Made by a program: the position numbers and the translations under genes. The notes beneath the pieces are model-generated. The model saw only the letters and a program-made list of their open reading frames with translations, was not told the DNA's origin and ran no database searches. Positions 16,262 to 64,000 of a stretch of DNA of 64,000 bases are shown one piece after another (positions within the stretch are counted from its first letter, which is position 1; the number at the start of each line of letters is the position of its first letter). Source of the stretch: Macrostomum lignano (Eukaryota); contig NIVC01002452.1 of the NCBI GenBank assembly GCA_002269645.1, forward strand, positions 1 through 64,000, given 5' to 3'.

Positions 16262-17167
16262 TTATGACGCGGACAGAAAGTTGGTGTTAATCAAGTAGTG
16301 CTCGTAGCAGCAGGCCCTGACGATGCCCGACAGGCCTTCAAAGAATACCGACTGCGGATTCCTGTGCGAGTGCCAGACGCGAAAGCCGAGATCAAAGAGG
16401 CGCCGCCACACTCGCAGAAATTTCGCATAGTCCGAGCCTTGGCCGCGCATCTCGGCAGTGTGAGACTCGAAAATCAGCTGCTTGACCCGCCTCAGGCAGC
16501 CTTCACTGATGGCCCGGTCAAGACTGTCCCACTCCCAGTATTCGATGTCCACTTTGACGATGTCCACTTTGCCGTCACTGAAGCCGAGATCCACGAACAG
16601 CTCGCACAGTGTGCGCATCCTCCAGCCTGAGCTCCCCTCGCTGCTCTTGTTGCCCCAGAGGCCCACCTGGTAGAACCAGGCGGACCGGCTTCGCTGGTGA
16701 TCCGGCACCGGCATGCTTGGGTCGAACATGTACACCTTGCAGCCGAACCGGCCCGACAGCTCGTCGTCGTAGCTCCAGACGTTGTTGATGCCGAACGAGA
16801 ACGCCACGCAGGACTTGCCGATGTTGAAGGGCTCGCTGATGCAGACATCCCAGCCTCCATCCAGAGCGTCTCCAACTCGGACACTGGTTGGACAGGCGAT
16901 CTGTAGCTCGTCAGTCACGTTGAAGTAAAGATTCTCAAGCTCAACAGCAGACAGCTGATTTAAGTTTATATTGCTTAGCGCGTGACCTTTGTGCCACCTC
17001 GGGGTCGGAGCTGCAGCTTTCGACTGGCCAACATTAATGTTTCCAATTCCTGCGATTCTGTGACTAATAGGAAAGTTGTTGAATATGCGAATGACAGCGA
17101 CTGACAGAAGCAGCAGCAGCACTATTGCTGCAGAGAACAGCAACTGAAAGCGTTGCACCAGAGGCAT
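16262..17167 (-). CDS. Methyltransferase-like protein 24 family (Methyltransf_22), intronless, N-terminal membrane anchor
   Basis: DGGWDVC, SFGINNVWSYD, CKVYMFDPS, DIVKVDIEYWEW, VKQLIFESH, CCYE motifs; hydrophobic segment after ATG at 17167 (ORF-track start 17221 is TTG). Confidence 0.8.
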   Translation of the reverse strand: MPLVQRFQLLFSAAIVLLLLLSVAVIRIFNNFPISHRIAGIGNINVGQSKAAAPTPRWHKGHALSNINLNQLSAVELENLYFNVTDELQIACPTSVRVGDALDGGWDVCISEPFNIGKSCVAFSFGINNVWSYDDELSGRFGCKVYMFDPSMPVPDHQRSRSAWFYQVGLWGNKSSEGSSGWRMRTLCELFVDLGFSDGKVDIVKVDIEYWEWDSLDRAISEGCLRRVKQLIFESHTAEMRGQGSDYAKFLRVWRRLFDLGFRVWHSHRNPQSVFFEGLSGIVRACCYEHYLINTNFLSAS

Positions 17168-23786: not shown

Positions 23787-25565
23787 ATGCCTCTGATGTA
23801 TGACCGACCGAAAATGTCTCAGGCGATGTACCAATCGCTGAAGCGGCACATCGTCCGCCAGCGCAAGAGGGATGCCGACATGAAAATGCTTGACGCCACC
23901 AATCAGCGGCTGCGAGCAGAGCGGGAGGAACTCCGCAGGCAGACGCTGCAGTCGTTGAGAAAGACCAAAGATGAGGTTGGAAGCCTGCAAGCTTTTAATT
24001 TGTCATTCTAAGAGAATTTGGGAAGGTGAGCAACTGAATATCTGGGAGGCTGGCCCAGAAACTGAGGACTGGAAGGTGACCCAAAAAATGAGGATCTGGG
24101 AGGCTCTCCCAACAACAACTGGGGATCTTCCGGATCTAGGAGGCTGGCCTAGCAACTGAGTATCTGGGAGGCTGGCCCAACAACTGAGGATCTGAGAGGC
24201 TGGCCCAGCAACTGAGTATCTGGGAGGCTGGCCCAACAACTGAGTATCTGAGAGGCTGGCCCAGCAACTGAGGATCTGGAAGGCTGGCCCAGCAACTGAG
24301 GATCTGGGAGGGTGGCTTAGCAACTGAGGATCTGGGAGGCTGGCCCAGCAACTGACACTCTGGGAGGCTGGCCCAGCAATTGGGGATCTGGGAGGCTGGC
24401 CCAGCAACTGACACTCTATAGGCTGGCCCAGCAACTGACACTCTATAGGCTGGCCCAGCAACTGACAGTCTGGGAGGCTGACTCAGCAACTGACAGTCTG
24501 GGAGGCTGGCCCAGCAACTGACACTCTGGGAGGGTGGCCCAGCAACTGAGTATCTGGGAGGCTGGCCCAGCAACTGAGTATCTGGGAGGCTGGCCCAACA
24601 ACTGAGTATCTGAGAGGCTGGCCCAGCAACTGAGGATCTGGGAGGGTGGCTTAGCAACTGAGGATCTGGGAGGCTGGCCCAGCAACTGACACTCTGGGAG
24701 GCTGGCCCAGCAATTGGGGATCTGGGAGGCTGGCCCAGCAACTGACACTCTATAGGCTGGCCCAGCAACTGACAGTCTGGGAGGCTGACTCAGCAACTGA
24801 CAGTCTGGGAGGCTGGCCCAGCAACTGACACTCTGGGAGGGTGGCCCAGCAACTGAGTATCTGGGAGGCTGGCCCAGCAACTGAGTATCTGGGAGGCTGG
24901 CCCAGCAACTGAGTATCGGGGAGGCTAGCCCAGCAACTGAGTATCTGGGAGGCTGGCCCAGCAACGGAGGATTTGGGAGGGTGGCGGTAGCGTAGCCTGA
25001 GCATTCACCTCTGGCCCAACACCACCTGTCCTGTACCCGCTGAAAGGTGAAGCGACTCCAAGGCCGCCTCGAAAAACTGCGCGAAGAGAAGAGCAAGCTG
25101 TTCAGCCGCTTCAAGGAGGTCTTTACCGAGGAGTCAGTCCAGAAGGAGCGCCAGAAGGAGGTGCAGAGCCACTTGCCACACCTGCAGCAGCAATTCCAGC
25201 AGCAGCAGCAGCAGACAAGCCTTTACCTGCAAGATATGCGGCATAGCCAGCCTCCGCCAGCTTCATCTTCGACCAGGTTGGGTAAGCGGGCAGCCCGCAG
25301 TCCGAGCCCCGTGTCAGGCGTTCGTCAGGCGAAAGCCGCCGCGAATACAGCCGTGTTCTCTCAGCAGCATTCTTCGGCATTAAAATCGGCCACTACCGGA
25401 CATATGCAGCATCCGCTGTCGGCCTCCTATAGGGGCTCCATCACTACTGGACAGTCGGCTCAGCAGATGCAGTTTCAGATGCAGCAGCAGCCGCAGCAGC
25501 GCCATTTCGGAGCACCGGTTTACCCCCCAGGCTACGGCGGTGACGGTTTCAAGCATCCCTTTTGA
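23787..25565 (+). CDS. GPS2: G protein pathway suppressor 2; exons 23787-23975, 25047-25565 (235 aa)
   Basis: MPLMYDRPKMSQAMYQSLKRHI...TKDE|VKRLQGRLEKLREEKSKLF matches the GPS2 N-terminal coiled coil; phase-0 GT-AG intron; Q/S/P-rich tail. Confidence 0.8.
24031..24990. repeat. 28-bp minisatellite family array in GPS2 intron
   Basis: (aactgag[g/t]atctgggaggctggcccagc)n with duplicated multi-unit blocks. Confidence 0.9.
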
Positions 25566-26022: not shown

Positions 26023-27215
26023 CATTGGTTTACAATTCTACGAGCGTATTTATGAAAAATATTTAAATCAGGGGGTTTAGGGTGGACAATTAAGAGGGGT
26101 GCAGTGCGCGACTGAGGAAACAGGCGAAATGACAGGGCGCCCATCAATACACCAAATATTGTCGCCCTTTGGACGGCCTCCTCCGATCGAACTGCATGCC
26201 CCACTGGATCTATAAAAAGTAAAGACAGGCTTTGCTATTTATAGATTTAAAAAGTAATGGCATGCATGATTTCGATTTGAAAGCATGACTTTTACGAGCG
26301 TTTACGTAATTCTGTAATTATTGACTGACTATATATTTTACATTTGTGCTAGTTCACCGCTCGTGAATTTCTAAGAAAGAATTCATTGTTTATGTGCTAT
26401 TACAGATTTCCTATAAGTGCTATATTCAAGTGGTCACTATCTCCGACGTCTTCCTAGACAAAAATTATTCCTTAAGAAGGTGCTATTTATTATCTTAGAT
26501 AATGCCCGATTTATGAGTTGGAACTAATAAAGAACTATTATTTTTGAAAGTACAGTATTCAACACATTTTCATTGTTTCTTATTGTCAACGCATTTCCCT
26601 ATATTTCTACTATCAGTAGAGCATCAAATAAAAGTTTTTATAATTAATATCATACGCGTAATATCCTGGTATAGGTATAGTATCGACATTTGTATCTATT
26701 AATCTATCAATGCGGTTATTCATAGCTGAACATACTATAAATACAAGGATACTGTAGCGTTTCATTGTTTGTTAATCTTTTCAGCCACTAAATGCCCGAT
26801 CTAGTATCACAATTTACATACAATGATTATGAGAATTCGTTCATTTGTAGACTTTTTGTAGACATTTTAAATATTAAAAACCTTTTTTCTACTCTCTAAA
26901 TGTATAGTAGCTAGACAAAACTGCCAGTTTTTTATTCATGAACATATATTCCTGATCAGCGTGCTTATTATTGTTATTACCTTATTCTATCAGATAGCTA
27001 CTATATGTAGCTAAGTTTTGGTTGAACCTACAAAATCGAATTAATAGCTGTTTGCTTTAAAATATAATTTTTTTTAACGTATATTCACTAAAGTTGTGCG
27101 GTGCCCAATTACTGTTTTAATTAAACAGTGAGACATCAATCACCTGCAGGCCGCCTCTGGTTCATTCTTTTCATCTGCAATAGCTCGTACCGCTTAACTG
27201 AATGCAGACACAGGT

Positions 27216-27912
27216 GCCCAGACACTGGGGATCTGGGAGCCTGGCCCAGCTACTGGGGATCTGGGAGCCTGGCCCAGCTACTGGGGATCTGGGAGGCTGG
27301 CCCAGCTACTGGGGATCTGGGAGCCTGGCCCAGCTACTGGGGATCTGGGAGGCTGGCCCAGCTACTGGGGATCTGGGAGGCTGGCCCAGCTACTGGGGAT
27401 CTGGGAGGCTTGCCCAGACACTGGGGATCTGGGAGCCTGGCTCAGCAACTGAGGATCTGGGAGGCTGGCCCAGCAACTAAGGATATGGGAGGCTGGCCCA
27501 GCAACTGACACTCTGGGAGGCTGGCCCAGCTACTGGGGATCTGGGAGGCTGGCCCAGCTACTGGGGATCTGGGAGGCTGGCCCAGACACTGGGGATCTGG
27601 GAGCCTGGCTCAGCAACTGAGGATCTGGGAGGCTGGCCCAGCAACTAAGGATCTGGGAGGCTGGCCCAGCAACTGACACTCTGGGAGGCTGGCCCAGCTA
27701 CTGGGGATCTGGGAGGCTGGCCCAGCTACTGGGGATCTGGGAGGCTGGCCCAGACACTGGGGATCTGGGAGCCTGGCTCAGCAACTGAGGATCTGGGAGG
27801 CTGGCCCAGCAACTAAGGATCTGGGAGGCTGGCCCAGCAACTGACACTCTGGGAGGCTGGCCCAGCAACTAAGGATCTGGGAGGCTGGCTTCCAAGATCC
27901 GGGAGGGTGGCG
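27216..27912. repeat. 28-bp minisatellite family array, no host gene identified
   Basis: Same unit with about 6-unit higher-order repeats; ends gggagggtggcgg like the GPS2 array. Confidence 0.9.
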
Positions 27913-32325: not shown

Positions 32326-32905
32326 TTAGGGGATCTGGATTCCTTTAATTATGATCGGATTAGAGGATCTGGATTCCTTTAATTATGATCGGATTAGGGG
32401 ATCTGGATTCCATTAATTATGATCGGATTAGGGGATCTGGATTCCTTTAATTATGATCGGATTAGGGGATCTGGATTCCTTTAATTATGATCGGATTAGG
32501 CTATCTGGATTCCTTTAATTATGATCGGATTAGGGGATCTGGGTTCCTTTAATTATGATCGGATTAGGGGATCTGGATTCCATTAATTATGATCGGATTA
32601 GGGGATCTGGGTTCCTTTAATTATGATCGGATTAGGGGATCTGGATTCCTTTAATTATGATCGGATTAGGCTATCTGGATTCCTTTAATTATGATCGGAT
32701 TAGGGGATCTGGGTTCCTTTAATTATGATCGGATTAGGGGATCTGGATTCCATTAATTATGATCGGATTAGGGGATCTGGATTGCTTTAATTATGATCGG
32801 ATTAGGGGATCTGGATTCCTTTAATTATGATCGGATTAGAGGATCTCGATTCCTTTAATTATGATCGGATTAGGGGATCTGGATTTCTTTAATTATGATC
32901 GAATT
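32325..32905. repeat. 34-bp satellite, block 2
   Basis: Same unit and orientation as 28420-29340. Confidence 0.9.
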
Positions 32906-32936
32906 AGACCTTCCCCAAATCAAACCTCCCCAAAGC

Positions 32937-34916
32937 CTAAAAGTCAGCCTTAGTATAAGCAACTAAACAGAACTCGCACAGGTCGGCAAGCCTGTTGGCG
33001 GCCTCCTCGCTCAGCAGGCAGCGAAATCGCGGATTGGCCAGCCGGTCTCGGGTCGGCGCCGCGGCAGTCAGGAAGCCCAGGCGGACCAGATCGACCAGGC
33101 AGGGCAGGGCGGCGGTGGCGTCGAAGACCTGCGACTCTCGCGAGATCACCCGACAGATGTTCAGCAGGCGTTCCAGCGGCACCGGTCGGACGGCCAGGGC
33201 CTCCATAGCGGCGGCGGCGGCTACTGCAGCCGGCTTTTTCTGCTTCTTCCGAGGCTTCTGCCTTCGACCGGAGTTGAAGGCGAACATTCGGCGATCGTGA
33301 GAGGGCGGCACGCGGGTGCACAGGAAGGCGGCCAGAAGGAGGAAGCGGCTGAGCAGCGGCAGGTCGGCAAACTGCTGCTGCTGCTGCTTCACGCCCCCGA
33401 CGCCAGTCAGCGCAGCCGATGCGACTGGAGACGTCAGCGGAGTCAGCAGGCCGCGCAGATGGGAGCACAGGATCGCTTTGATCTTGCCGCCACCGCTACT
33501 AGCGGAGCAGGCGGACCGGCAGGAGGCGACGGCCTCAGCGATGAGTGCGGGCTGCCGCGTCATCGGGAAAGCGATGTCGACGGCCATCTGGACGATGGGG
33601 TCGCGGTCGCCGCCAGGTAGGCCAGCTGACACAATGTCCACCAGCTGCGGCTTGGTGTAGGCCGGCAGGTGGAGGCTGCGGGGGCAGATGCGGTTTGGGA
33701 TTTGGGATAGCTGGCTCACCGACTGACGATCTGAGATGCTGGCCCAGCAACTGAGGATCTGGGAGGCTGGCCCAGCAACTGAAGATCTGGGAAACTCGCC
33801 CCCAGCAACTGAGGATCTGGGAAACTCGCCCCTAGCAGCAACTGAGGATCAGGGAAACTCGCCCCCAGCAACTGAGGATCAGGGAAACTCGCCCCCAGCA
33901 ACTGAGGATCTGGGAAACTCGCCCCCAGCAACTGAGGATCTGGGAAACTCGCCCCTAGCAGCAACTGAGGATCTGGGAAACTCGCCCCCAGCAACTGAGG
34001 ATCTGGGAAACTCGCCCCCAGCAACTGAGGATCTGGGAAACTCGCCCCTAGCAGCAACTGAGTATCTGGGAAACTCGCCCCTAGCAGCAACTGAGTATCT
34101 GGGAAACTCGCCCCTAGCAGCAACTGAGGATCTGGGAAACTCGCCCCTAGCAGCAACTGAGGATCTGGGAAACTCGCCCCTAGCAGCAACTGAGTATCTG
34201 GGAAACTCGCCCCTAGCAGCAACTGAGTATCTGGGAAACTCGCCCCTAGCAGCAACTGAGTATCTGGGAAACTCGCCCCTAGCAGCAACTGAGTATCTGG
34301 GAAACTCGCCTCTAGCAGCAACTGAGGATCTGGGAAACTCGCCCCCAGCAACTGAGGATCTGGGAAACTCGCCCCCAGCAACTGAGGATCTGGGAAACTC
34401 GCCCCCAGCAACTAAACACAAGCAAACAAACCAATAGGCAGAGGCGGCGGCCGCGGCGGCGCAGCCCCTGGCGTAGCTGGTCCAGGGCAGGCGGCCAACC
34501 AGCAGCAGGCGAGCGCCAGTCAGCTGCCGGATTCTCATCAGGGCGGCCAGTATTTTGCCATCGGCGGACTCGGCCAGACGCTCGGCGTCGTCCAGAGCGA
34601 GCCAGTCTCCGGGCCGGAGGCAGCAGCCGAGAGCGCTGGCCCAGTCGTCTGCGGGATCAGGCCTCCTGGAGCAGCCATCCCCGCTGGAAGCCAGGTGAAT
34701 GATGAAGTCTACCAGCTTCCTGACGCTGCCAGCCGACTCGGTGCAGGTGAGCCGCAGGTGAGGCAGGCCGGATAGCGCAGCCTCGGCCAGAAGGGTCTTG
34801 CCGCAGCCCGGCGGGCCCCACAGGTGTACAAAGGACACCGTGGACTCGGGAGGCTGTTCCAGCAATTGGCGAAGCTGAGCGAACTCCACTTCGCGACCAA
34901 CAATGCGAGTTTTTGC
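32937..34916 (-). CDS. ORC5: Origin recognition complex subunit 5; exons 34916-34432, 33675-32937; no genomic ATG
   Basis: IVGRE, Walker A GPPGCGKT, LALDDAERL, LHLPAYT, LPLLSRFLLLAAFLCTRVPPSHDRRMF, PVPLERLL, LVDLVRLGFL, PRFRC; phase-2 GT-AG intron; 1224 nt in frame. Confidence 0.85.
33725..34413. repeat. 28-bp family array diverged to 30/33-bp units in ORC5 intron
   Basis: First units canonical (ctgggaggctggcccagc), remainder ctgggaaactcgccc[c/ctag]cagc. Confidence 0.9.
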
Positions 34917-37900
34917 CTGCAATATGTGCGCGATTGGGAGGATATTATGCAGTTCTTATTGATTCTTTCGGAATACTGTATATCTGCTTATTTATTTTTC
35001 TAGATCTAATTATAAGACCTCTGTTATACAACATTTTCCTAAGGGACTCAAGCCAAGTTAATTGCCCATTTGAGTCTTGCCAAGGTCAATTATAAAGCAG
35101 CAGAGTCAGTTGAGACTCCAAATTTCTCATTTGCATTAAGAAACCCACGCATTGGATATAGAATAAAGAAATCTAAAGCTTAAGGCTAAAGGTAGGCCTA
35201 ACAAAAATGAGAATTTACTAGGATTAAAAATGAAATTTGATAATTTTATTCCAGCTTTATACTTTTAGCATTGCTATTTAAGTATGATCCATAAATATAT
35301 ATATTACTCTAGAATTTACATATAGACAATAAAATAAAGATAAGATCTACTGAATATACTAAATATAGGACACTCACTTTGTACACTTTTATGCACAATG
35401 CAAAAAGCTAAAGTATTATAGAACTAAAATAAAATCGTCCTTATACCACTTATGCACTGCTAAATACTTATTAGGCCTAGGCCTAGCCTATTCTAGATTT
35501 TGATAATATTTATGATTGGTATTTTAGATGAACTAGATAGATAATTTGCTGATTAGTACAATTGTTCAATATGTTTATAGGTCTATATTTTTGTAGTTAT
35601 AAAGAGTGAGATGATAGTTTGAGTATTTTTGCCAACTTTTAACGTTTATAATTAACACATATTTTATCATGTCATGTCAATCACTCTTTTTGATCTAGTT
35701 TTTAGCTAATTCTAATGTTCTAATTATAGACAAATACTATAATTTTATACAATAAAAACTCAGTATTATTGGTTGAAATCAAAGTTTCTTTCTTATAAGG
35801 TTTTCAGTGGCAATTATCTAGGACAAAATATTTTGAATCTCTTTGACACTAGCTCTAGATTTTGGCATAAACTTGTCATAGGCCCTAACTTCTTCATAGC
35901 CTTTTGCATTAGGTCTAGATATAGTAATGTTAATCTTTTGCCTTATTGTAGCGCATGGCTTAGGTGCCCCAGACACCCACCCTTACTGTGCCGCAATGGC
36001 ACCTAAATAAAGATGTTAGACAGAGGGGAAGCACTTAACTTTGCCATATTGCACCCAGTGGGAGATTTAGGGGGAAAGCACACAAGGCAGATTTTTTTAT
36101 ATAGAAAAAAACACATTATAATGTATATGTACATTTTTGTCTATATCCCACTTCACTATACTACACTACACCTGCTGCCTTTTATTGCTTTGCCACATTG
36201 CGCCATGCCAGGATATACTTTATAAATCAAGTGCGCATAACAAAAAATATTTCACCAAGAAAGGCACACATAACAGTGGATTTTTTTGCCAGAAAAGTAT
36301 GTATATCATTGGATTTAAATGTAAACAAGGGTAACACTAGCACCAATATTAATTTACTGAAGCTCCCTTATTGCAAAGAAAAATTTTAATGAAGTTTTGC
36401 ATATATGTACATTTATTTTTTTTACTTTATACAAAATGCATTATTTGTTTTACCTAAATGAATTTTACCTTGGGTGCCATGCCACGCCGCACTATGCCAG
36501 GCTGATCTATGCAAGATACTGTTTACTAAAATGCCTATGCACTGTAATTGGGATCATTTGCATTTGTCTACCCAATTAGGCCTAGGTCCTAGCTTATCTA
36601 AATTGTACTTGTGTTGTGTATTTGATGCTACAATATGAAATTATTGGGATAAGGCTAAAGAGGTTGGTTGCATTGGCATAGAGCCCAGTATTCAGGAAGT
36701 CAATTTTATTTATTGTTTTTTAAAGGCAATTGTTATTGTTACAATGATGATACAAATAAAAAGCAATGGTTATTTTTACAGTTAACATATAAAATGGTGC
36801 ATGACTAAGATGTAAGACTACTTATATACTAAGACTGCCACAGCTAGGCCTATTACTAGCTATTGGTATTGAAGGCTAGGTTTTTTAAGGTTAGAAATCC
36901 AGTTGCTAGCTGGCTTTTAGGACTCAAAATCTAGTTGCCAATAGCTATTTTTGGTTGCCCATTGGCAACTAGCCAAATTCTTGAAGATAGATATTTCTAA
37001 GGCTATGTTTAAAAGGCAGAAATTTGTTCTCTTAACTCTAAAATTGCTATCAATATGGCAAACAATAACAAACCAACAATTCCATCATATTGATTCATAT
37101 GCCTATGGCACTTTTTATTAAATTTACAAAATCATTTTTTGAAATTGGCAACTGGCTTGTGGAAAATGAAGTTGCCAGATTGGCCTCTAACGCCAAAAAT
37201 CCAGTTGCAAATGAGATTTTCAAAGGGCCAAAAAACCTTGTATAGCCTAAAAAACCCAGATTGAGAGGGAGCTACCAATCTTCTAGCATTGCTATTCCTC
37301 TCACAGGTTCCTTTCTTGCAACCCAACCTTATCCTGCTGGCTCCCCTATCTACTCGTCTCCTTTTAGCACTAGGGGGCCTATCCAATAACATTACATATT
37401 AAGCCAAATTTCTCCTCTAGCTCCCTCAAGTGTGGTCTTGGTCCTATACCCATAAAAAACATAAATTAAATGACAATTAACAAACTTTCACTGCAAAAAA
37501 TAAAAGGTTCTTAAGTTTAAAAAATAAAGAAACATATTATTTATATACTAGGCCTAGATAGTAACTTATAATAGTTCTTGTTACCAACAGCTAGCTTTAA
37601 GCTTACTTATATAATTATTAACTATTAATGTAAATGAACTTTCTTCTCTATGATTGTAAAAATAGCCATTTTGCTTCTTACATATGATGACCATAAAAAT
37701 AGCAGTTTTGCTATTTAAATTATATCTATATGGTTAGCCCCCTCCCTACATTAAGTTAAAACCTTAAGCCTAGACAGTGTCTTATGTGTTGACTGTAAAA
37801 AATGGTTTCGCTATTTATATGGTCACCATAGCATAACAATAACAACTGCCTTTTTTAAAACATTCTGCAGTTCAAGTTAAACAAATTTGCATAAGCCTGT

Positions 37901-39749
37901 TTGTACTTGATACAATACATCTTGGGTTTTACACATTTTATTATGCAATACAAGTTGTATCCTACATGTAATCAATTTTTACTTTGCATTTGTGCGGCAT
38001 ACTAACTGGCTAGGGCCTAACGAAAAACTGAAGCTAGCCTATCTAAATTGCAACTAGAACAAGAACGACTAGGGCCTATTAGGCCTAGGGCCTACGGCCT
38101 AGTATTAGTATTTCTAGGGCCTAAGCGAATTTTTTTAAGTAAGCTAAATGGCTAGTTTAAAAAAGAAAGGTTATGCATGTATGGACCAAAGCCTATCTTT
38201 GTAAGAACAAAAAACATAGAGTTTTTTACTTTAAGAGCAGGGCTGCATTCTGCATTATAATAACATGACATCAGTATTTTGAAGTTCAAGCAGCACGCAC
38301 GCATTGCAAATTCGATTTTTAATTGTTAGTAACGTGCAGTTAAATGAAGGACTCATTAAAAATTGTTTAAAAAACTGTCCTAGATTCTATCAGAGCTTGA
38401 TAATTCACTCATTATTTTTCTATTTTTCCTAGCCGTATTAATGTTGCTGTTGCTAATAAAAACTTAGCATTTTGTGCTTCTTTTAAAATCTGGTTTTTCG
38501 ATGACCTGCGAGAACTCAGTTGACCGTCGTCATGGTCAAACTGTGGCACAGTTGCGCATTTTTCGTCAAGCTTTTGTTCATTTGCTAAGTGAAATGGAGG
38601 CCTACTTAAATTACCCATTCATCTGGAGCATATGATTATCAAATATCAAATAATTGCGTTATAGGTCTAGAATAGATAGTAAGAAAGGCTTACTATGTAT
38701 GCACATGCTAGTAATAAATTGGGATTGGGAATTGTCCATGAATGCTTATAAAATTTTCTACATCAGGATCAGATTGATAAGAGTAGCAAAATATGCACAT
38801 GCACTTAACTACAGTGTAGGCTATCATAGTTTGCAACATCAATTAAGGCATCAAGGTATAGGCCTAGTGTATACTATGTATGTATACAATTCCAAACTTA
38901 TAAATTCTAAGCATAAGCAGAGAGGGCTACAGTGACAGAAATAGATAGATAGCTATATTGCTACATGCTAATACTTATATTGCATGCAATATGTTGTCTA
39001 TGATGCCAAGCCAGGCTAGTCAACTAGGAAAGTACATTTTCTAGGTCACTAGGTGACTAGGTCTAGACTCTTAGAGTTTTTTAAATTAAATAAAATGAAA
39101 GTTGTAGTCTAACAGGGGAAGGGGGCTACTCAATAAATATGTGCAATTTATATCAGTTTGGATATATTTTTTGTTTGTTTGTTTTTGTTGTATACTACTT
39201 GTACTTAATCAAATTTCTTTATTTGTATTCTTTGTCTTTTGGGATAAATATCTAGCTAACTAACCTATCTTAATAATGCTAAAACAAAAACTATTAAGTA
39301 ATATAAAGACTAGAAGTTTATAGTTTGTTACTACTAGCAAAATGTTGGCTTACAAATATTGGCTCATACAAGGTGAGATGAGTATGTTTATCTTATCTAC
39401 TACAAAAACCCCATAAGTCATGCCCTTAATATACATATAGGGGTGCAATATATACTGTCTCATTGCTTTCTACTTATGACAATAAGAACTAAGGTTGCTA
39501 TAAGTAGGCCTAAGCTTAAAATTATCTAGTTATCTAGTCTGTTTAAAATTACACTGTCTCATGTCTGTTTTAACTCATGCCTTATGATAATAATAATATT
39601 AATATCAATTAAGTTAGGCCTGTTCAAGGCTATTTTATGTTATAATGTAATGATTTAAGTTTTAATGTCTAGAAGAGTTTCATTGCTGCTCCTGCCATTT
39701 ACCCAATTTAAACTTTGTTTTCCTCCACTCTCTCTTATGCAATATTGCA

Positions 39750-40117
39750 ATGCCGTCTCCAGCTGCGCCACTGCTAATGCGCCTGCTAGCCTGCTCAGCA
39801 TCTGCCGCGGTGCGCGCTGGCGCCTATGTCCACGAGGTGATGCGCAGTGGCGAGCTCGGCATCGTCATCAAGGGCCACAATGATCTGCAGACGCAGGCAG
39901 ATCGAGGCGCCCAGCGGCTCATCACGGCCAACCTGCGGGCCGCCTTCCCTGGCCTGACTGTCATCGGCGAGGAGGAGGAGGACCCTGCAGCGGCGCCGCT
40001 TGGCCCTGATGAGATCGTTGAACCTCTGGACGAAGTGCTGCAGCAGTGTCACAGGTGTGCCAGGGCTGAGACTCGTGGCATTTCTGGACTTAGGGGAACT
40101 AACTAACTAACTAACTG

Positions 40118-44782: not shown

Positions 44783-47700
44783 ATGAGATTGGCGCTTCTA
44801 GCTTTGAGTCTGGCTGCTTTAGTGCAGTGTGCCTTCTCTGGTGAGTTTTTAACACAGACATAAGTACAGTCTGACCCACGCTGAAACTATAGCTGACCCA
44901 TATTGGAAAAGCCTGGATTTAAACTTCTTGAGTTTGTTAGAACAGTCCAATCCTTATGATAGCAGTCTGACAACCACTAGAGCAGTCTGACAACCACTAG
45001 AGCAATCTGACAAACCACTAGAGCAGTCTGACAACCACTAGAGCAGTCTGACAACCACTAGAGCAGTCTGACACACACTAGAGCAGTCTGACAACCACTA
45101 GAGCAGTCTGACACACACTAGAGCAGTCTGACACACACTAGAGTAGTCTGACACACAGTAGAGCAGTCTGACACACACTAGAGCAGTCTGACACACACTA
45201 GAGCAGTCTGACACACACTAGAGCAGTCTGACACACACTAGAGCAGTCTGACACACACTAGAGCAGTCTGACACACACTAGAGCAGTCTGACACACACTA
45301 GAGCAGTCTGACACACACTAGAGCAGTCTGACAACCACTAGAGCAGTCTGACAACCACTAGAGCAGTCTGACACACACTAGAGCAGTCTGACACACACTA
45401 GAGCAGTCTGACACACACTAGAGCAGTCTTACACACACTAGAGCAGTCTGACACACACTAGAGCAGTCTGACACACACTAGAGCAGTCTGACACACACTA
45501 GAGCAGTCTGACACACACTAGAGCAGTCTGACACACACTAGAGCAGTCTGACACACACTAGAGCAGTCTGACACACACTAGAGCAGTCTGACACACACTA
45601 GAGCAGTCTGACACACACTAGAGCAGTCTGACAACCACTAGAGCAGTCTGACAACCACTAGAGCAGTCTGACACACACTAGAGCAGTCTGACACACACTA
45701 GAGCAGTCTGACACACACTAGAGCAGTCTGACACACACTAGAGCAGTCTGACACACACTAGAGCAGTCTGACACACACTAGAGCAGTCTGACAAACACTC
45801 ACTAGAGCAGTCTGACAAACACTCACTAGAGCAGTCTGACAACCACTAGAGCAGTCTGACAACCACTAGAGCAGTCTGACACACACTAGAGCAGTCTGAC
45901 AAACACTCACTAGAGCAGTCTGACACACACTAGAGCAGTCTGACACACACTAGAGCAGTCTGACATTCAATAGAGCAGTCTGACAACCACTAGAGCAGTT
46001 TGACACACACTAGAGCAGTCTGACACACACTAGAGCAGTTTGACACACACTAGAGCAGTCTGACACACACTAGAGCAGTCTGACACACACTAGAGCAGTC
46101 TGACACACACTAGAGCAGTTTGACACACACTAGAGCAGTCTGACACACACTAGAGCAGTCTGACACACACTAGAGCAGTTTGACACACACTAGAGCAGTC
46201 TGACACACACTAGAGCAGTCTGACAACCACTAGAGCAGTCTGACACACACTAGAGCAGTCTGACAACCACTAGAGCAGTTTGACACACACTAGAGCAGTC
46301 TGACACACACTAGAGCAGTCTGACACACACTAGAGCAGTCTGACACACACTAGAGCAGTTTGACACACACTAGAGCAGTCTGACACACACTAGAGCAGTC
46401 TGACAACCACTAGAGCAGTCTGACACACACTAGAGCAGTCTGACAACCACTAGAGCAGTTTGACACACACGGTCTGACCCTCGGTCTCCGCTCAAAAAAT
46501 TTCAGTTCGACTCCCACCCTCGCTAACAAGGACGCCGCCAAAGGAGGCGGCCTTCAAGCCTGGTGAGCCCTTCAGGCTTGAGTGCGAGGCCTCGGGCAGT
46601 CCGGCCCCGACATTCACATGGAAGCGAAACGGTCAGGTGCTGGATTTGACAGCCGACTCAGATCGGTACGAGCGGCCTTCTGGCTCGGGAACGCTAGTGC
46701 TCGTTTCTCCCGGTGTCCGTGACGACGGATCTTACCAGTGTCTGGCCCAGAATAAGCTGGGCGTGGCCGCTTCGAACCTAACGGTAAGTTTGGAAAATTG
46801 GAAATTTCATTAATAGGTCGACAGGTAAACCGTAAGCGATCCCATCAGATCCTCAGGTTATTCCTTTCAGGATTTCGTACCATATATTCTCATTATTCCC
46901 ATTTTTATTCTCTAACTAATTCCCAATCAATGCCTGCAGTTCCTTCGCCCTGCCATGCTGGGCCAGTTTCTTCAAGAGCCGAGTGCCACGGTGCGGCGGC
47001 GGCTTGGAAGTCGGCTGGCATTGCCCTGCGTGCCGCCCATAAATTTCCCCGACGCCCCGGTAGTCTGGCACCGGATTGCAGATGCGGACGGCGCCCAGCC
47101 GATGGTGATTCAATGGTCCAATCGAATCAACATCGACCCCGTGAATGGCAACCTGCTGTTTTCTAACATTCAGCTGTCCGACAAGGCAACCTACCGATGC
47201 AGCGTGGAGAACAGGATTCTTAGACGGGCTGTTCAAGGTGGAAGCTACCGGCTGGATGTGATCAAAGGCGCCATCACATCGGCTGCTGCTCAGCTCATGG
47301 CGCAGAAACCCTCTTTTATAACTGCTCTCGCGAACAGAACTCTCGATTTGTTTTGCTTCTTCTCCGGCTTCCCGACGCCCAGCATCCAGTGGAAGAAGGA
47401 TTCGACTGAGGTCTCTTCGGGGGAGCGGCTGCAACTGCTGGACTCTGGCGCCCGCCTGCGGCTCATCGATATTGACCCGGATTATCACGCTGGTGAGCTC
47501 GCCGAGGCCAGCTCTGCTGCCCCATCCTCGGGCTGGAGCGCTCCCAGATCCTCGGTTGCTGGGCCAGCCTCCCAGATCCTCGTTTGCTGGGCCAGCCTCC
47601 CAGATCCTCGTTTGCTGGGCCAGCCTCCCAGATTCCCAGTTACCAGACCAGCCTCCCAGATTCCCAGTTACTAGGCCGGCCCTCCAGATCCCCAGTTACT

Positions 47701-49214
47701 AGGCCAGCCTCCCAGATTCCCAGTTACCAGACCAGCCTCCCAGATTCCCAGTTACTAGGCCGGCCTCCCAGATCCCCAGTTACTAGGCCAGCCTCCCAGA
47801 TTCCCAGTTACTAGGCCAGCCTCCCAGATTCCCAGTTACTAGGCCGGCCTCCCAGATCCCCAGTTACTAGGCGAGCCTCCCAGATTCCCAGTTACTAGGC
47901 CAGCCTCCCAGATCCCCAGTTACTAGGCCAGCCTCCCAGATTCCCAGTTACTAGGCCAGCCTCCCAGATCCCCAGTTACTAGGCCAGCCTCCCAGATCCC
48001 CAGTTACTAGGCCAGCCTCCCAGATCCCCAGTTACTAGGCCAGCCTCCCAGATCCCCAGTTACTAGGCCAGCCTCCCAGATCCCCAGTTACTAGGCCAGC
48101 CTCCCAGATTCCCAGTTACTAGGCCAGCCTCCCAGATCCCCAGTTACTAGGCCAGCCTCCCAGATCCCCAGTTACTAGGCCAGCCTCCCAGATCCCCAGT
48201 TACTAGGCCAGCCTCCCAGATCCCCAGTTACTAGGCCAGCCTCCCAGATCCCCAGTTACTAGGCCAGCCTCCCAGATTCCCAGTTACTAGGCCAGCCTCC
48301 CAGATCCCCAGTTACTAGGCCAGCCTCCCAGATTCCCAGTTACTAGGCCGGCCTCCCAGATCCCCAGTTACTAGGCCGGCCTCCCAGATCCCCAGTTACT
48401 AGGCCAGCCTCCCAGATCCCCAGTTACTAGGCCGGCCTCCCAGATTCCCAGTTACTACTGCAGCAAGACACTGCACTCGATTTTCTTAGAAAACATCCGG
48501 AGGCCGGCAAGGAACGCCTATTTGTCCCATCACCAGTGCATTTAGTATTCCTCTAGAAAACGCATAGCGCTGAATGAAGTTTTGCCATAGACAAATTCAA
48601 TCGAGAAAAATTCTATTTCCTGAAGGCATATGTTCCTCATTAGGTCGGCCTCCGCCAGATTCTCGCAGTTGCTCCCAGGTCCATCGCCCAGTCAAGTGCC
48701 CTTACCCAGAATCGCTACAACTAACTCCATAAAATTGAGTCGCCATAAAATCTCCAACCCTTTTGTCACGGCAACCGCAGGTGTTTACCAGTGCACCGGC
48801 GCCAATGAGGGAGGCTTCGACGACGCCGGCACCTACCGCGTACGAGTGGCCAGCGAGCCCTACTGGATTCAGAAGCCAGCTGACGTCTCCGTGCCCGAAG
48901 GCGGCAGCCACACGTTCCACTGCGAGGCTGGCGCCGCGGCCGGCGACCCGAAGTGGCTCATCAACGGTGTACCGGTCAGCGGGTCCGACAGCCGCTTCTC
49001 CCCGGTCGGCAGTGAGTTTCAGTTTAGCAATCTCACGGTGAGAGACTCGCTCGTGGTGCAGTGCAATGTCAGCAATAGGTATGGATACGTATTCACCAAT
49101 GCCTACCTGAGTGTGCTGCCGCCGTCAGCCACTTCGGACACAAAAGTGCCATGGTTCACTATTAAGTACTACTGGCTACTGTTGAATTACTTTGCCACAG
49201 TGTTTATTCCTTAA
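44783..49214 (+). CDS. L1/neuroglian-family protein with four Ig domains only; exons 44783-44840, 46506-46783, 46940-47492, 48781-49214 (440 aa)
   Basis: Signal peptide MRLALLALSLAALVQCAFS; Ig1 LECEASGSPAPTFTWKRNG...DGSYQC; Ig2 GNLLFSNIQLSD..YRC; Ig3 FCFFSGFPTPSIQWKK...GVYQC; Ig4 PYWIQKP...QCNVSNRYGYVFTNAYLSVL; hydrophobic C-terminus; phases 1/0/1. Confidence 0.85.
44960..46470. repeat. 20-bp minisatellite (ctagagcagtctgacacaca) in Ig-gene intron 1
   Basis: About 75 units. Confidence 0.95.
47540..48457. repeat. 28-bp family array in Ig-gene intron 3
   Basis: Units drift from gctgggccagc to actaggccagcctcccagat[c/t]cccagtt. Confidence 0.9.
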
Positions 49215-50583
49215 GCTGCATGGTCTCGAAAAGGTTTCTCACTTTTGTTGGTGCAATTTTGGTTTACAAAGCCATCTAATCTGATTTTAAAGGGCTTTCA
49301 ATGATAAAGTACAGCAGAATAAAATATTTTGCAAGCAAGAAGCTGGCGGTGAGTTCTGAATTGGAGTGTGATGTACAGGCTGGCGTAATGGACGTGCTTT
49401 TTTACATGCCGGTATCAGCTCAGGAAAATCAAATTTGATTGTGATGTAACCTGGGGAACGATAGCTTACAGAACTATGGCGCGAGGTACTGATAGAAGGG
49501 ATCAGAACTGACCCTCCGAGGGGCACCCGCCCTAGATGGAGAACTGGTTGTGATCCGATAGCAAAGTCCCGACTCCCACTGTTCTAATCCCAACTACGGC
49601 CTGGAGTTTTAAAGGTGGGGACTGCTTAAAGTAGTTCTGCCACCAACCCAATTCTGGGCATCTAAGGGGTGCCTTGACAGTGCTAAGAATCAGGTCTTTC
49701 GCATAGGGGGCTTCTGATCTGCGCAAGGTCGAGACTCGAGACCCCCTGACTTTAGCTGGGTTTGGGATAGAGAGAGAGTTCAAATGAACAATGATTTGAC
49801 TCCCGTCTGGCAGCTATAGCGCTGTGATCGGAAACAATGAGGAATTGGCTTGTATTGCTTTAGGCTCTGTTCACTGGTTTACTGGTTCACTGGTTCTGTA
49901 GTACTGGAATTTTGTACTTTGTTATATTTCTTAAAATTCTGGAGCATTGTTATTTACTGTAGACTGCAGGGAAAAAGAGAAATATAAAGTATTGTTTGTT
50001 CGTTTACTTGGCCTTTTTAGCGCCACCTAAATGTAAATAAATGTGTGTGTATGCTTTGGATAATATTCCTTACTGAAAGTTTTGTAGCTAAATATGCACT
50101 AAAACAATTCGAAATTTTATCTTTATGCATGGTTAAAATATAAACTTTCTTTCAAAACTCGGCATTATCGAATTGGGTGTCAGTATAAATCTTTGCTTGT
50201 TTATTTTATAAATTTGTCGCTAACTAGGTTTTCATTCATTTAATTACAATCCAGCGGCGCCAAAATATGTGCTGGGGGCGCTAAAAATCACTGCCAAAAG
50301 GTTTGACAACTTTCTACTTGTGCCTATAGCTACTTGTCCCAAAATTCATTCCTAGTCACGAGCGAGATGCATAAATTTAACCATCAGTTGGTCAGTCGTG
50401 TATTTGTCCAGCATTGAATATCACAGAGAGGCAAACAAACAATGCTGCATTGAAATCCTATTCCTAGCTATTAAACATCAAGAAAAATCACGTGGCTTGT
50501 ACTGTGGGGCTCAATTCATAGCCTCACATAAAACGCGTTAAAATCTCCTGCCAAATTCATAACTCGCGAATCTGCCAAGAATT

Positions 50584-56004
<5,421 letters not shown>

Positions 56005-57089
56005 TAAATTTAAATTGTATATATTTAATTTGTCCTACTGTCAGTAGAGTAATGCAACCTTAGCTCGTAAGTAGTAAAAACATCTATGGTTCTATAGCGA
56101 AAATCGAGCAGAGCCAGACGGATGCCCGTCTGCCTGGCAGAACATGGATGTTTAAAACAGGCTAACCTCACCACGAAGAGAGCTGCAGGACAAACACAGA
56201 AAAACAAGCAATGCTGTGCTTAAATTCGTAGCAAGCCAAATCCGTGTTTTATTGAACCTAGCTAAAAATATCTAACCAGCTAGCACTTTAATATATTGAA
56301 TAGAAATTCAATAATCAAGGTTTGCTTGCTTGATGCTAGAATTAGTGCGCCGTCTTTGACATCTCTGGACAAACTTTGCACACACGAGGCTTTGCAATTT
56401 CACATTTCGTTCTGTTTAAAGTCGGAACTGCACCTCACATTTTTTTGCATTTCTCCAGGCTTGAGCAACCCTGCGGAGTTCTTTGCCGAGTTTAACTGTA
56501 GCTCTGCTAACCTTGGTAAGCTTGAGAGCGAGAGGCAGGTATTCGAACCCTGTCAAATAAAAGCAGAAACTTTGCCTACCCCATGCGTACCAGATGATGC
56601 ATAGCCAGGCATTTTTGAGACAAATCTACTTCAATGAAGCAAAGGTAAGCAATGTGAAGGTGAGTGCTTTGGGCGTTGTATGCGTGCGCACAGTATGTGC
56701 GTTCGCGTCCCCCCCCATCACAATGGCCTGTCCAAGGAGTTCGAGAACTTAGAATCTGGAATCGCAAGGAAATCGCTTAGCTACACTTAGCTATAGCACT
56801 CGCCTATCTGCTCTCAATTGGCCCGAAAATGCGGGCGTTCCAGAATTCTGGATTTAGAATTCCCTGGCCTGTCTCCACCTCCACTCTGTCGGGCCGCTCG
56901 TGGCAGCCCCAGCGAGCACGTGTTGGCTGCCCCCCGCTCATCTCAGGCCCATTGTATAGCCCTCTGCCCCCGAACTGTTGCTGCCTATTCTGTTAGTCTA
57001 GAAAAAAGGAAAGACTGCAGCTGAGACCAACTGGCCAGCTAAGCAATACGCGGCTTTTCTCGAGCTCTGGGCAATCACAGCTAGTAGAG

Positions 57090-59778: not shown

Positions 59779-60360
59779 GCCCGGGCCCCAGTGACTATAC
59801 TGTTTACCCTCTTCGACGCACAAACCGTGTTCGCATCGATTTTGCAATTCGGTTTTGTGCAACCCGTTCTATTCTAATCTCTCCAGTAATTAATCGCCAC
59901 TCGCTTATTGAGGCTTAAGGATGTGATAACCTACAGAGACATGGCTATTTATTTATTTAAGCGTAACAATACAATAATTGAAAACGCGCCTTGAAGTTCG
60001 TCTTGTTGCCTGTTTGGGGGTCATTAAAATACGATCGAATGCTTGTTTGCTTTTTTTCGTTCAATTTATTACAGTATGAAGGTTGAAAAAACTGAACAAA
60101 TTGATTATAAAATTATTCTTGCCATACGCCTTAATCAGTAGTGTAAAAGAGAATTTTCATTTAAATTGAAACAGTAAAAGTTTGAGATAAAAATTAAGTA
60201 ACAAAGGATCCGAGATTTTTTTAAGTCGCCATGACATTTTCAACAAAAATTTGATCTCGGGGAGAAAATCCCTTCCAGCTACTGTTAGTAGTTAGCAAGT
60301 ATTTATAGTGCAGTTTCATTGCAAATAGGAATAGATAGTTCGTAAAGATCACCCACCGAC

Positions 60361-62914
<2,554 letters not shown>

Positions 62915-62929
62915 CTGCGGGTGCGTTGT

Positions 62930-64000
62930 GCGCGTACACTGATGACTCATCACATTAGCAGACTTATCCATCCGTGTGCGTACACTGATGCTCATCACAT
63001 TAGCAGACTTATCTATCCGTGTGCGTACACTGATAACTCATCACATTAGCAGACTTATCTACCCGTGTGCGTACACTGATGCTCATCACATTAGCAGACT
63101 TATCTATCCGTGTGCGTACACTGATGCTCATCACATTAGCAGACTTATCTATCCGTGTGCGTACACTGATGCTCATCACATTAGCAGACTTATCTACCCG
63201 TGTGCGTACACTGATGCTTATCACATTAGCAGACTTATCTATCCGTGTGCGTACACTGATGCTCATCACATTAGCAGACTTATCTACCCGTGTGCGTACA
63301 CTGATGCTTATCACATTAGCAGACTTATCTATCCGTGTGCGTACACTGATGCTCATCACATTAGCAGACTTATCTATCCGTGTGCGTACACTGATGCTCA
63401 TCACATTAGCAGACTTAACTACCCGTGTGCGTACACTGATGCTCATCACATTAGCAGACTTATCTATCCGTGTGCGTACACTGATGCTCATCACATTAGC
63501 AGACTTATCTATCCGTGTGCGTACACTGATGCTCATCACATTAGCAGACTTATCTATCCGTGTGCGTACACTGATGCTCATCACATTAGCAGACTTATCT
63601 ACCCGTGTGCGTACACTGATGCTTATCACATTAGCAGACTTATCTATCCGTGTGCGTACACTGATGCTCATCACATTAGCAGACTTATCTATCCGTGTGC
63701 GTACACTGATGCTCATCACATTAGCAGACTTATCTACCCGTGTGCGTACACTGATGCTTATCACATTAGCAGACTTATCTATCCGTGTGCGTACACTGAT
63801 GCTCATCACATTAGCAGACTTATCTATCCGTGTGCGTACACTGATGCTCATCACATTAGCAGACTTAACTACCCGTGTGCGTACACTGATGCTCATCACA
63901 TTAGCAGACTTATCTATCCGTGTGCGTACACTGATGCTCATCACATTAGCAGACTTATCTATCCGTGTGCGTACACTGATGCTCATCACATTAGCAGACT
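62930..64000. repeat. 45-bp minisatellite (cgtacactgatgctcatcacattagcagacttatctatccgtgtg), intronic, runs off the window
   Basis: About 24 units upstream of the 62914 acceptor. Confidence 0.95.

What the first reader, a model, noticed from the sequence alone, without database searches (positions are those of the whole stretch)
34880..34960. ORC5 has no genomic start codon but opens in frame at a splice acceptor: candidate translation start from a spliced-leader AUG
Seen: the ORC5 frame (-) is closed by an in-frame TAA about 10 codons upstream of the TTG at 34922, with no ATG in between. The coding sequence begins exactly at ttgcag|GCA AAA ACT CGC (junction 34917/34916, phase 0), and no upstream exon is apparent in about 4.8 kb of AT-rich DNA. 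Established: flatworm spliced leaders end in AUG, and this AUG was shown to act as initiator Met in Schistosoma. Inference: SL-AUG + GCA gives MAKTRIVGRE..., a normal-length ORC5 N-terminus (408 aa), so an essential replication gene would depend on trans-splicing for its start codon.
Basis: partly seen in the sequence, partly recalled or inferred. Interest (0 to 1): 0.8.

Follow-up and report, generated by a model that had tools for sequence, protein, structure and literature searches.

The report
Flatworm ORC5 gene lacking its own ATG
An intact ORC5 replication gene of the flatworm Macrostomum lignano starts at a splice acceptor with no genomic ATG, so its start codon most likely comes from the AUG ending the trans-spliced leader, a mechanism already shown in schistosomes.

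Summary
On the minus strand the ORC5 frame reads TAA(34958-56)...ATA TTG CAG|GCA(34916), with no ATG between the stop and the acceptor. The first in-frame ATG is codon 127, past Walker A and B. The gene is a real, intact ORC5 (Pfam ORC5_C 3e-19; human ORC5 3e-14). Residue 1 aligns with human residue 4, so only a Met and a few residues at most are missing.

I identified the host as Macrostomum lignano, from a 98-100% protein match and 96-98% DNA identity to two GenBank contigs. Its single spliced leader ends in ATG. About 45% of its conserved genes and 85% of its stem-cell genes are trans-spliced. The published trans-acceptor motif [T/C]TNCAG is matched here by TTGCAG in phase 0.

No consensus donor with an in-frame ATG lies in the 4.8 kb upstream. 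Weak candidates (MAPK|GTAAAA, MPHKCK|GTAAAA) are no more frequent than chance.

The SL-AUG reading is the best explanation (about 0.65). It is not proven, because no transcript or second-copy data could be reached.

The mechanism has been known since 2006, with more than 40 schistosome cDNAs needing the leader AUG. This is a new member of a known kind, of modest interest and mainly useful for annotation.

The parts
34917..34922 (-). Splice acceptor TTGCAG directly upstream of the first ORC5 codon. It is the proposed SL trans-splice acceptor.
   Evidence: Sequence. It matches the M. lignano trans-acceptor motif [T/C]TNCAG (PMC8629364). Phase 0 with GCA at 34916.
34956..34958 (-). In-frame TAA that closes the ORC5 frame upstream. 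No ATG lies between it and the acceptor.
34432..34916 (-). ORC5 coding exon 1 (AKTRIVGRE...). It holds the AAA+ Walker A motif GPPGCGKT and the Walker B motif LALDDAE. It contains no start codon.
   Evidence: AAA_16 2e-10; query residue 7 aligns with human ORC5 residue 10.
33676..34431 (-). Intron 1 (donor TATTG|GTTTGT, acceptor CCCCCGCAG|C, phase 2). Almost all of it is a 33-nt x 21 tandem array at 33745-34410.
   Evidence: The junction was chosen by fit to human ORC5 (LHLPAYT aligned with LYFPDYS). An alternative phase-0 junction would add 13 residues.
32937..33675 (-). ORC5 coding exon 2, ending in TAG (32939-32937). It holds the ORC5_C domain.
   Evidence: ORC5_C 3.3e-19.
34923..39749 (-). 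AT-rich upstream region, proposed to be outron plus promoter. It has no repeats shared with the rest of the window, no Pfam domain in its ORFs, and no GT[AG]AG donor preceded by an in-frame ATG.
36469..36480 (-). Rival candidate cis micro-exon: ATG GCA CCC AAG|GTAAAA (MAPK). It has a good Kozak context and sits in the most GC-rich 40-nt patch of the upstream region. That patch is one copy of a locally repeated 27-nt motif.
   Evidence: Candidates of this quality are expected by chance (mean 3.1 per shuffle).
37982..37999 (-). Rival candidate cis micro-exon: ATG CCG CAC AAA TGC AAA|GTAAAA (MPHKCK). Its first three residues match those of human ORC5, which I treat as a coincidence.
39750..40106 (+). 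First exon, with its own ATG, of the divergent neighbour gene of the inositol monophosphatase family. It bounds the ORC5 upstream region.
   Evidence: Inositol_P 2e-08; last exon 9e-13.

Best explanation
This is an intact two-exon ORC5 gene of Macrostomum lignano whose genomic copy lacks an initiation codon. The pre-mRNA is transcribed from somewhere in the AT-rich 4.8 kb upstream. That upstream stretch (the outron) is removed by spliced-leader trans-splicing at TTGCAG|GCA (34917/34916). The 35-nt leader, which ends ...TTATTGCAUG, is joined directly to GCA AAA ACU. The leader's terminal AUG is then the first and only AUG in frame, and translation gives MAKTRIVGRE..., an ORC5 of about 408 aa.

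Shown here:
- the sequence facts;
- ORC5 identity and intactness;
- host identity;
- phase and motif match;
- absence of a consensus cis alternative in the intergenic region.

Taken from the literature:
- the SL sequence ends in ATG;
- trans-splicing is frequent in conserved and stem-cell genes;
- the SL AUG works as an initiator in schistosomes.

Inferred:
- this particular AG receives the SL;
- ribosomes start at the SL AUG.
For: - Frame: it is closed by TAA upstream with no ATG before the AG. The first in-frame ATG is codon 127, downstream of Walker A and B, so internal initiation would give a dead AAA+ protein.
- ORC5 identity: Pfam ORC5_C 3.3e-19 plus AAA_16. Human ORC5 7jpo_E scores 3e-14 over residues 7-419, with query residue 7 at human residue 10. 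Met plus this exon therefore gives an N-terminus about two residues shorter than the human one.
- Host: the neprilysin-like exon in the window matches GenBank 'BOX15_Mlig021095g1 [Macrostomum lignano]' at 98-100%. Window 46.7-64 kb is 96-98% identical in DNA to contigs NIVC01001104.1 and NIVC01004471.1 of GCA_002269645.1.
- Spliced leader (PMC8629364): the M. lignano SL ends in ATG. 30% of all genes, 45.3% of human-conserved genes and 85% of neoblast genes are trans-spliced. The top trans-acceptor motif is [T/C]TNCAG, matched here by TTGCAG.
- ORC1 of M. lignano is flagged TRANSSPLICED in a published table.
- Precedent: the SL AUG is in frame in 28% of S. mansoni trans-spliced transcripts, and more than 40 cDNAs need it (Cheng 2006, quoted in PMC9851317).
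- No cis alternative: seven GT[AG]AG sites lie in 34917-39749, about my chance estimate, and none has an in-frame ATG. Weaker ATG-plus-donor candidates are no more frequent than in shuffles (observed 1 with score >=7, against a simulated mean of 3.1).
- The second codon is GCA, giving G at +4 and a Met-Ala N-terminus.
Against: - There is no direct RNA evidence. No ORC5-like protein or transcript from any Macrostomum is in the collections searched, and the SL-Met model could not be looked up.
- Two phase-0 micro-exon candidates with in-frame ATG and GTAAAA donors exist. One sits in the most GC-rich patch upstream.
- Flatworm acceptors are often shared between cis- and trans-splicing (PMC12582326), so the motif match discriminates only weakly.
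- The -3 position of the SL AUG is U, which is a suboptimal context.
- ORC5 N-terminal extensions vary from 7 to about 55 residues among orthologues. Homology therefore cannot exclude a longer N-terminus.
- The window is one of at least three about 98%-identical copies of the sampled part of this region. This copy could have lost its start codon.
Confidence: 0.65

Rival explanations
1. The start codon is supplied in cis. A short upstream first coding exon holds the 5'UTR, an ATG and a few codons, and is cis-spliced in phase 0 to the acceptor at 34917. That exon may or may not be trans-spliced itself. The SL AUG is then not the initiator.
For: - Phase-0 candidates with in-frame ATG exist: ATG GCA CCC AAG|GTAAAA at 36480..36469, and ATG CCG CAC AAA TGC AAA|GTAAAA at 37999..37982.
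- The first has a good Kozak context, lies in the most GC-rich 40-nt patch of the region, and implies a 1.55 kb intron. That is typical for this genome, where the mean is 1.1-1.4 kb.
- Orthologues have N-terminal extensions of variable length.
- ORC5's own intron uses a non-consensus donor, GTTTGT, so weak donors do function here.
Against: - None of the seven GT[AG]AG donors in the 4.8 kb has an in-frame ATG.
- Candidates of this quality are expected by chance: mean 3.1 in Markov shuffles, at least one in 92% of shuffles, and only 1 observed.
- The GC-rich patch is one copy of a 27-nt motif repeated three times locally. That argues against a unique exon.
- The only GT[AG]AG donors with an in-frame ATG lie at least 6.8 kb upstream, antisense to or beyond the neighbour gene.
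Confidence: 0.22
2. This copy has lost its start codon, or uses a non-AUG start. In this reading the TTGCAG is fortuitous and the 5' end is unspliced. An ancestral ATG, for example at the in-frame ATA (34925-34923, which would give MLQAKTRIVGRE), mutated in this copy of a polyploid genome. The copy is then a young pseudogene, or it initiates weakly at AUA, UUG or CUG.
For: - Five near-cognate codons (CTG, ATC x2, ATA, TTG) lie in frame between the TAA and GCA.
- Parts of the window (46.7-64 kb) exist in at least two other copies that are about 2% divergent. Redundancy would tolerate the loss of a start codon.
- The 25 nt before the AG are about 48% GC (my count), not as AT-rich as the rest of the upstream region.
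Against: - The 407-codon frame and the Walker motifs are fully intact.
- Near-cognate codons are expected by chance in any 12 codons, so they carry no weight.
- An acceptor motif in phase 0 at this spot has only about a 4% chance expectation (estimate).
- Unspliced transcripts would carry several upstream out-of-frame ATGs.
Confidence: 0.1
3. [quoted passage not shown]
For: The locus is surrounded by tandem arrays, and the assembly of this genome is known to be difficult.
Against: The 5' junction itself is unique sequence, not repeat. A clean acceptor motif in phase is not what an error would create.
Confidence: 0.03

Closest known systems
Schistosoma mansoni mRNAs that take their initiator Met from the SL 3'-terminal AUG (Cheng, Cohen, Ndegwa & Davis, J Biol Chem 2006; quoted in PMC9851317 and PMC12582326)
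   Same: A flatworm SL ending in AUG is joined in frame to an ORF that has no AUG of its own. The leader AUG becomes the start codon.
   Different: The species (free-living M. lignano) and the gene (ORC5) differ. In schistosomes, use of the SL AUG was shown experimentally. Here both the trans-splicing at this site and the initiation are inferred from DNA only.
slORFs: ORFs created by SL addition, detected from RNA-seq and ribosome footprints (slORFfinder, PMC9851317)
   Same: The concept is the same: the SL supplies the start codon of the recipient ORF.
   Different: slORFs are defined by SL-containing reads and ribosome footprints, and neither was available here. Most reported slORFs use near-cognate NUG codons in nematode or tunicate leaders rather than a terminal AUG.
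SL trans-spliced genes of Macrostomum lignano (Wudarski 2017, PMC5730564; Ustyantsev & Berezikov 2021, PMC8629364)
   Same: The host is the same. The acceptor matches the [T/C]TNCAG motif. ORC5 is a conserved gene tied to cell proliferation, the class most often trans-spliced. ORC1 is flagged TRANSSPLICED.
   Different: In my term searches of their main text, those papers do not mention use of the SL ATG as a start codon. Their pipeline trims the SL before mapping, so ORFs that depend on the SL AUG would look 5'-partial. ORC5 is absent from the GenBank protein set.
ORC5 (origin recognition complex subunit 5), e.g. human 7jpo_E and Drosophila 4xgc_E
   Same: An AAA+ N-terminal domain with Walker A and B motifs plus the ORC5_C domain, collinear with human ORC5 over residues 10-430.
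   Different: It is very divergent (E = 3e-14 against human). It has low-complexity Ala, Gln and Lys runs. It has no genomic ATG.

Membership tests
ORC5 (origin recognition complex subunit 5) | ORC5_C domain (PF14630) above Pfam's gathering score | tested here: met
   70.1 bits against a cutoff of 28.2, E = 3.3e-19, covering profile positions 1-154 of 155.
ORC5 (origin recognition complex subunit 5) | N-terminal AAA+ domain with Walker A and B, collinear with solved ORC5 chains | tested here: met
   human ORC5 7jpo_E, E = 3.2e-14, query 7-419 aligned with chain 10-430. Motifs GPPGCGKT and LALDDAE are present. AAA_16 scores 2e-10.
SL-AUG-initiated flatworm mRNA (Cheng et al. 2006 type) | The host has SL trans-splicing and an SL whose 3' end is AUG | tested here: met
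   The host was identified as M. lignano. SL CGGTCTCTTACTGCGAAGACTCAATTTATTGCATG comes from PMC8629364. The SL is conserved in the genus.
SL-AUG-initiated flatworm mRNA (Cheng et al. 2006 type) | The SL is actually joined to this acceptor, shown by SL-containing reads or cDNA | not testable with these tools
   No transcript data were reachable. Only the motif match (TTGCAG against [T/C]TNCAG) is available.
SL-AUG-initiated flatworm mRNA (Cheng et al. 2006 type) | The SL AUG is in frame with the main ORF, with no intervening stop | tested here: met
   The junction is in phase 0. ATG|GCA AAA ACT... stays open for 407 codons.
SL-AUG-initiated flatworm mRNA (Cheng et al. 2006 type) | No genomic AUG can give the full-length protein | tested here: inconclusive
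   Within the exon the feature is met: there is an upstream TAA, no ATG, and the first in-frame ATG is codon 127. No GT[AG]AG donor with an in-frame ATG lies in the 4.8 kb upstream. Weak micro-exon candidates cannot be excluded.
SL-AUG-initiated flatworm mRNA (Cheng et al. 2006 type) | Translation starts at the SL AUG | not testable with these tools
   This needs ribosome profiling, N-terminal proteomics or a reporter assay.

The most novel reading that the evidence does not exclude
ORC5, a subunit needed for replication licensing, can only be translated after SL trans-splicing in M. lignano. Production of the protein would then be gated by the trans-splicing machinery, which acts on 85% of neoblast genes. 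That would be a built-in coupling between stem-cell RNA processing and the competence to replicate. It would also point to a sizeable hidden class of ORFs that depend on the SL AUG and that the current SL-trimming annotation reports as partial or drops.
Probability: 0.15. Interest if true: 0.45.

Novelty: new member of a known kind. Interest (0 to 1): 0.27.

Why it matters
The main value is practical.

The M. lignano annotation pipeline trims the leader before mapping and runs TransDecoder on the trimmed models. ORFs that need the SL AUG will therefore be called 5'-partial, truncated at an internal Met, or lost. ORC5 is in fact missing from the GenBank protein set. The cause may be that transcripts overlapping repeat annotations were removed, because its intron and 3' flank are tandem arrays.

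A systematic screen would correct N-termini in a model organism used for stem-cell and regeneration work. The screen would look for conserved ORFs that open at a mapped SL site in phase 0 with no ATG.

Biologically, the case would extend a mechanism shown in parasitic trematodes to a basal free-living flatworm and to a core replication gene. It would not reveal a new mechanism.

Tried and rejected
- Full-length ORC5 in the 5.8-billion-protein word-index search found nothing. The candidate list hit the 8000 cap, and I suspect low-complexity words swamped it.
- Exon 1 alone in the same search found nothing.
- HMMER of exon 1 against 1.84 billion representatives returned only weak AAA+ hits and distant ORC5 hits (best E = 5.9e-10). 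No Macrostomum ORC5 appeared. No annotated or transcript-derived N-terminus exists to compare with.
- The exact look-up of the single-exon gene 16262-17167 was not on record. A likely reason is that the window differs by about 2% from the GenBank copies in the region compared.
- There is no SL RNA gene or SL copy in the window at up to 3 mismatches. Rfam at gathering threshold found nothing.
- No paper holds both 'Macrostomum lignano' and 'ORC5'. The supplements that were held do not list ORC5. One table shows ORC1 as TRANSSPLICED, but that file was cut when stored. Cheng 2006 and Wasik 2015 are not held.
- The Logan transcript of a related species (L003, SRR28338164) for the neprilysin-like gene carries no SL at its 5' end. 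It says nothing about ORC5.
- I could not reach the homologous ORC5 copy on NIVC01001104.1. It lies about 22 kb from the only gene I could look up, and the flank limit is 10 kb.
- I considered that the resemblance of the acceptor (ATTGCAG) to the SL 3' end (ATTGCATG) marks a retrocopy of a trans-spliced mRNA. I rejected this because the gene has an intron and the similarity does not extend further upstream.
Full report
**1. The observation**

Read on the minus strand, the region is ...TAA(34958-34956) GAA CTG CAT AAT ATC CTC CCA ATC GCG CAC ATA TTG(34922-34920) CAG|GCA(34916-34914) AAA ACT CGC ATT GTT GGT CGC GAA....

- The frame is closed by TAA 12 codons before the TTG, and there is no ATG before the AG.
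- The junction is in phase 0.
- Exon 1 has no ATG in any frame for 238 nt. Its first in-frame ATG is codon 127. That is downstream of Walker A (GPPGCGKT) and Walker B (LALDDAE), so internal initiation would not give a working AAA+ protein.
- GC content falls from 65-68% in the exon to 22-44% across 34917-39700.

**2. What the gene is**

The two-exon model is 34916..34432 plus 33675..32937. The donor is TATTG|GTTTGT and the acceptor is CCCCCGCAG|C. It gives 407 codons ending in TAG.

- Pfam finds ORC5_C (E = 3.3e-19, above the curated cutoff) and AAA_16.
- The best solved structures are human ORC5 (7jpo_E, E = 3.2e-14, collinear over query 7-419 and chain 10-430) and Drosophila ORC5.
- Query residue 7 aligns with human residue 10. 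One added Met therefore gives MAKTRIVGRE against human MPHLENVVLCRE.
- Other ORC5 orthologues have 13 to about 55 residues before the conserved (C/G)RE. The SL-Met N-terminus is plausible, but homology does not require it.
- Intron 1 is almost entirely a 33-nt x 21 tandem array, and a 34-nt x 12 array follows the stop codon.

**3. The host**

ORC5 itself found nothing in the protein collections.

- The neprilysin-like exon at 58126-59775 hit GenBank 'hypothetical protein BOX15_Mlig021095g1, partial [Macrostomum lignano]'. Identity was reported as 100%. By tblastn it is 98.2% in exon 2 and 100% in exon 1.
- That protein is encoded on two contigs of assembly GCA_002269645.1, NIVC01001104.1 and NIVC01004471.1.
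- Window 46.7-64 kb is 96-98% identical to both contigs, intergenic DNA included.

The window is therefore M. lignano, or an extremely close relative. It is either a third copy or haplotype, or it comes from another assembly.

The absence of ORC5 from GenBank proteins may be because the submitted annotation excluded transcripts overlapping repeat annotations.

**4.

Yes.

- M. lignano has a single 35-nt leader, CGGTCTCTTACTGCGAAGACTCAATTTATTGCATG, which ends in ATG (PMC8629364).
- The top motif at its 21,754 mapped trans-splice acceptors is [T/C]TNCAG. The site here is TTGCAG.
- 30% of all genes, 45.3% of human-conserved genes and 85% of neoblast genes are trans-spliced.
- ORC1 is flagged TRANSSPLICED in a published table.
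- The leader is conserved in other Macrostomum species.
- All reported parasitic flatworm leaders end in ATG.

**5. The cis-exon rival**

Only phase 0 is compatible with the downstream frame.

- Within 34917-39749 there are seven GT[AG]AG sites on the minus strand, about my chance estimate.
- None is preceded by an in-frame ATG without a stop. This includes the best-looking donor, AAA|GTGAGT at 35377, which has an in-frame TAG ten codons upstream.
- The nearest GT[AG]AG sites with an in-frame ATG are at least 6.8 kb away, antisense to or beyond the neighbouring inositol-monophosphatase-family gene.
- Weaker candidates exist: ATG GCA CCC AAG|GTAAAA (36480..36469) and ATG CCG CAC AAA TGC AAA|GTAAAA (37999..37982).
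- The first lies in the most GC-rich 40-nt patch upstream. That patch is one of three local copies of a 27-nt motif.
- In 500 first-order Markov shuffles of the region, candidates with a donor score of 7/9 or better averaged 3.1, and 92% of shuffles had at least one. Only 1 was observed.

The candidates therefore carry no weight beyond chance, but they cannot be excluded without RNA data.

**6. Other rivals**

- Start-codon loss in this copy, or non-AUG initiation. Five in-frame near-cognate codons lie between the TAA and GCA, including ATA, which would give MLQAKTRIVGRE. This is possible because the genome holds several copies that are about 2% divergent. However, near-cognate codons are expected by chance, and the frame is otherwise intact. 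An acceptor motif in phase at exactly this place has only about a 4% chance expectation, from 294 motif matches on 128,000 strand positions times about 18 positions.
- Sequence error. This is unlikely, because the junction is unique sequence.

**7. Weighing**

My rough priors are these.

- About 0.7 that this conserved, proliferation-related gene is trans-spliced.
- About 5-10% of trans-spliced genes need the SL AUG, by analogy with schistosomes.
- About 3-5% of genes have a micro first coding exon.

These are updated by the motif match, the lack of consensus cis donors, and the Met-Ala start with G at +4.

| Explanation | Confidence |
|---|---|
| SL-AUG initiation | about 0.65 |
| Cis micro-exon | about 0.22 |
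| Start-lost copy or non-AUG start | about 0.10 |
| Sequence or assembly error | about 0.03 |

Trans-splicing at this AG and initiation at the SL AUG remain inferred.

**8. Novelty and verdict**

The mechanism has been established since 2006 and is cited in current flatworm SL literature. No held paper mentions both M. lignano and ORC5. In my term searches, the M. lignano trans-splicing papers do not mention SL-ATG use.

This is a new, still unproven member of a known kind. It is useful as a pointer to a class of gene models that the SL-trimming annotation will mis-call.

Interest is about 0.27.

Noticed in passing
window 35193-39505 (ORC5 / inositol-phosphatase intergenic region): The palindromic 8-mer TAGGCCTA occurs 11 times in the 64 kb window, and 9 of these lie in this 4.3 kb stretch. 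All 5 TAGG[GC]CCTA sites are there too, as are all 6 CTAGGCCTAAT hits at up to 1 mismatch (shuffles give a mean of 1.5). It could be a cluster of protein-binding sites or the relic of a mobile element. Its meaning is unknown.
   Followed up: partly
window 46700-64000 compared with L001 (NIVC01001104.1) and L002 (NIVC01004471.1): This part of the window is 96-98% identical, not 100%, to two different GenBank M. lignano contigs. At least three near-identical copies or haplotypes of this region therefore exist, or the window comes from a different assembly or strain. This fits the known hidden polyploidy of the species.
   Followed up: partly
window 33745-34410, 10744-11291, 11534-11866, 24003-25114, 27128-27508, 47500-47674: A dispersed satellite (33-nt unit measured in the ORC5 intron) recurs in introns and flanks of several genes. 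In translation it reads ...GPASQILSCWASLPDPQLLGQPPRS.... It generates long spurious ORFs on both strands.
   Followed up: partly
window 32503-32907: A 34-nt x 12 tandem array (ATCTGGATTCCTTTAATTATGATCGGATTAGGGG) starts about 30 nt after the ORC5 stop codon. It probably lies inside or just after the 3'UTR.
   Followed up: no
window 39736-39755 (+) and 34917-34925 (-): The neighbour gene's start context (caatATTGCAATGccg) and the ORC5 acceptor (catATTGCAG|GCA) both resemble the 3' end of the spliced leader (tttATTGCATG). ATTGCA occurs 47 times on the two strands of the window, so this is probably coincidence.
   Followed up: partly
window 53875-55840: About 0.9 kb of a trinucleotide repeat that reads as poly-Ile, poly-His or poly-Met/Asp depending on frame. 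It is followed by a hexanucleotide-type repeat (HSQS... / GSETGSE...) at 55162-55834.
   Followed up: no
window 57009-57089 and protein P0001: The GenBank model of the neprilysin-like gene is annotated as 5'-partial and begins 27 codons upstream of an obvious ATG at 57090 (MDQEPDEK...). The Logan orthologue P0002 starts at the equivalent Met. The GenBank N-terminus is probably translated 5'UTR.
   Followed up: partly
window 36037-36063, 36186-36212, 36475-36501: A GC-rich 27-nt motif (CCTGGCATnGnGCG..TGGCAnnGCA on the minus strand) occurs three times, with spacings of 149 and 289 nt, in otherwise AT-rich DNA upstream of ORC5. One copy overlaps the best cis micro-exon candidate.
   Followed up: partly
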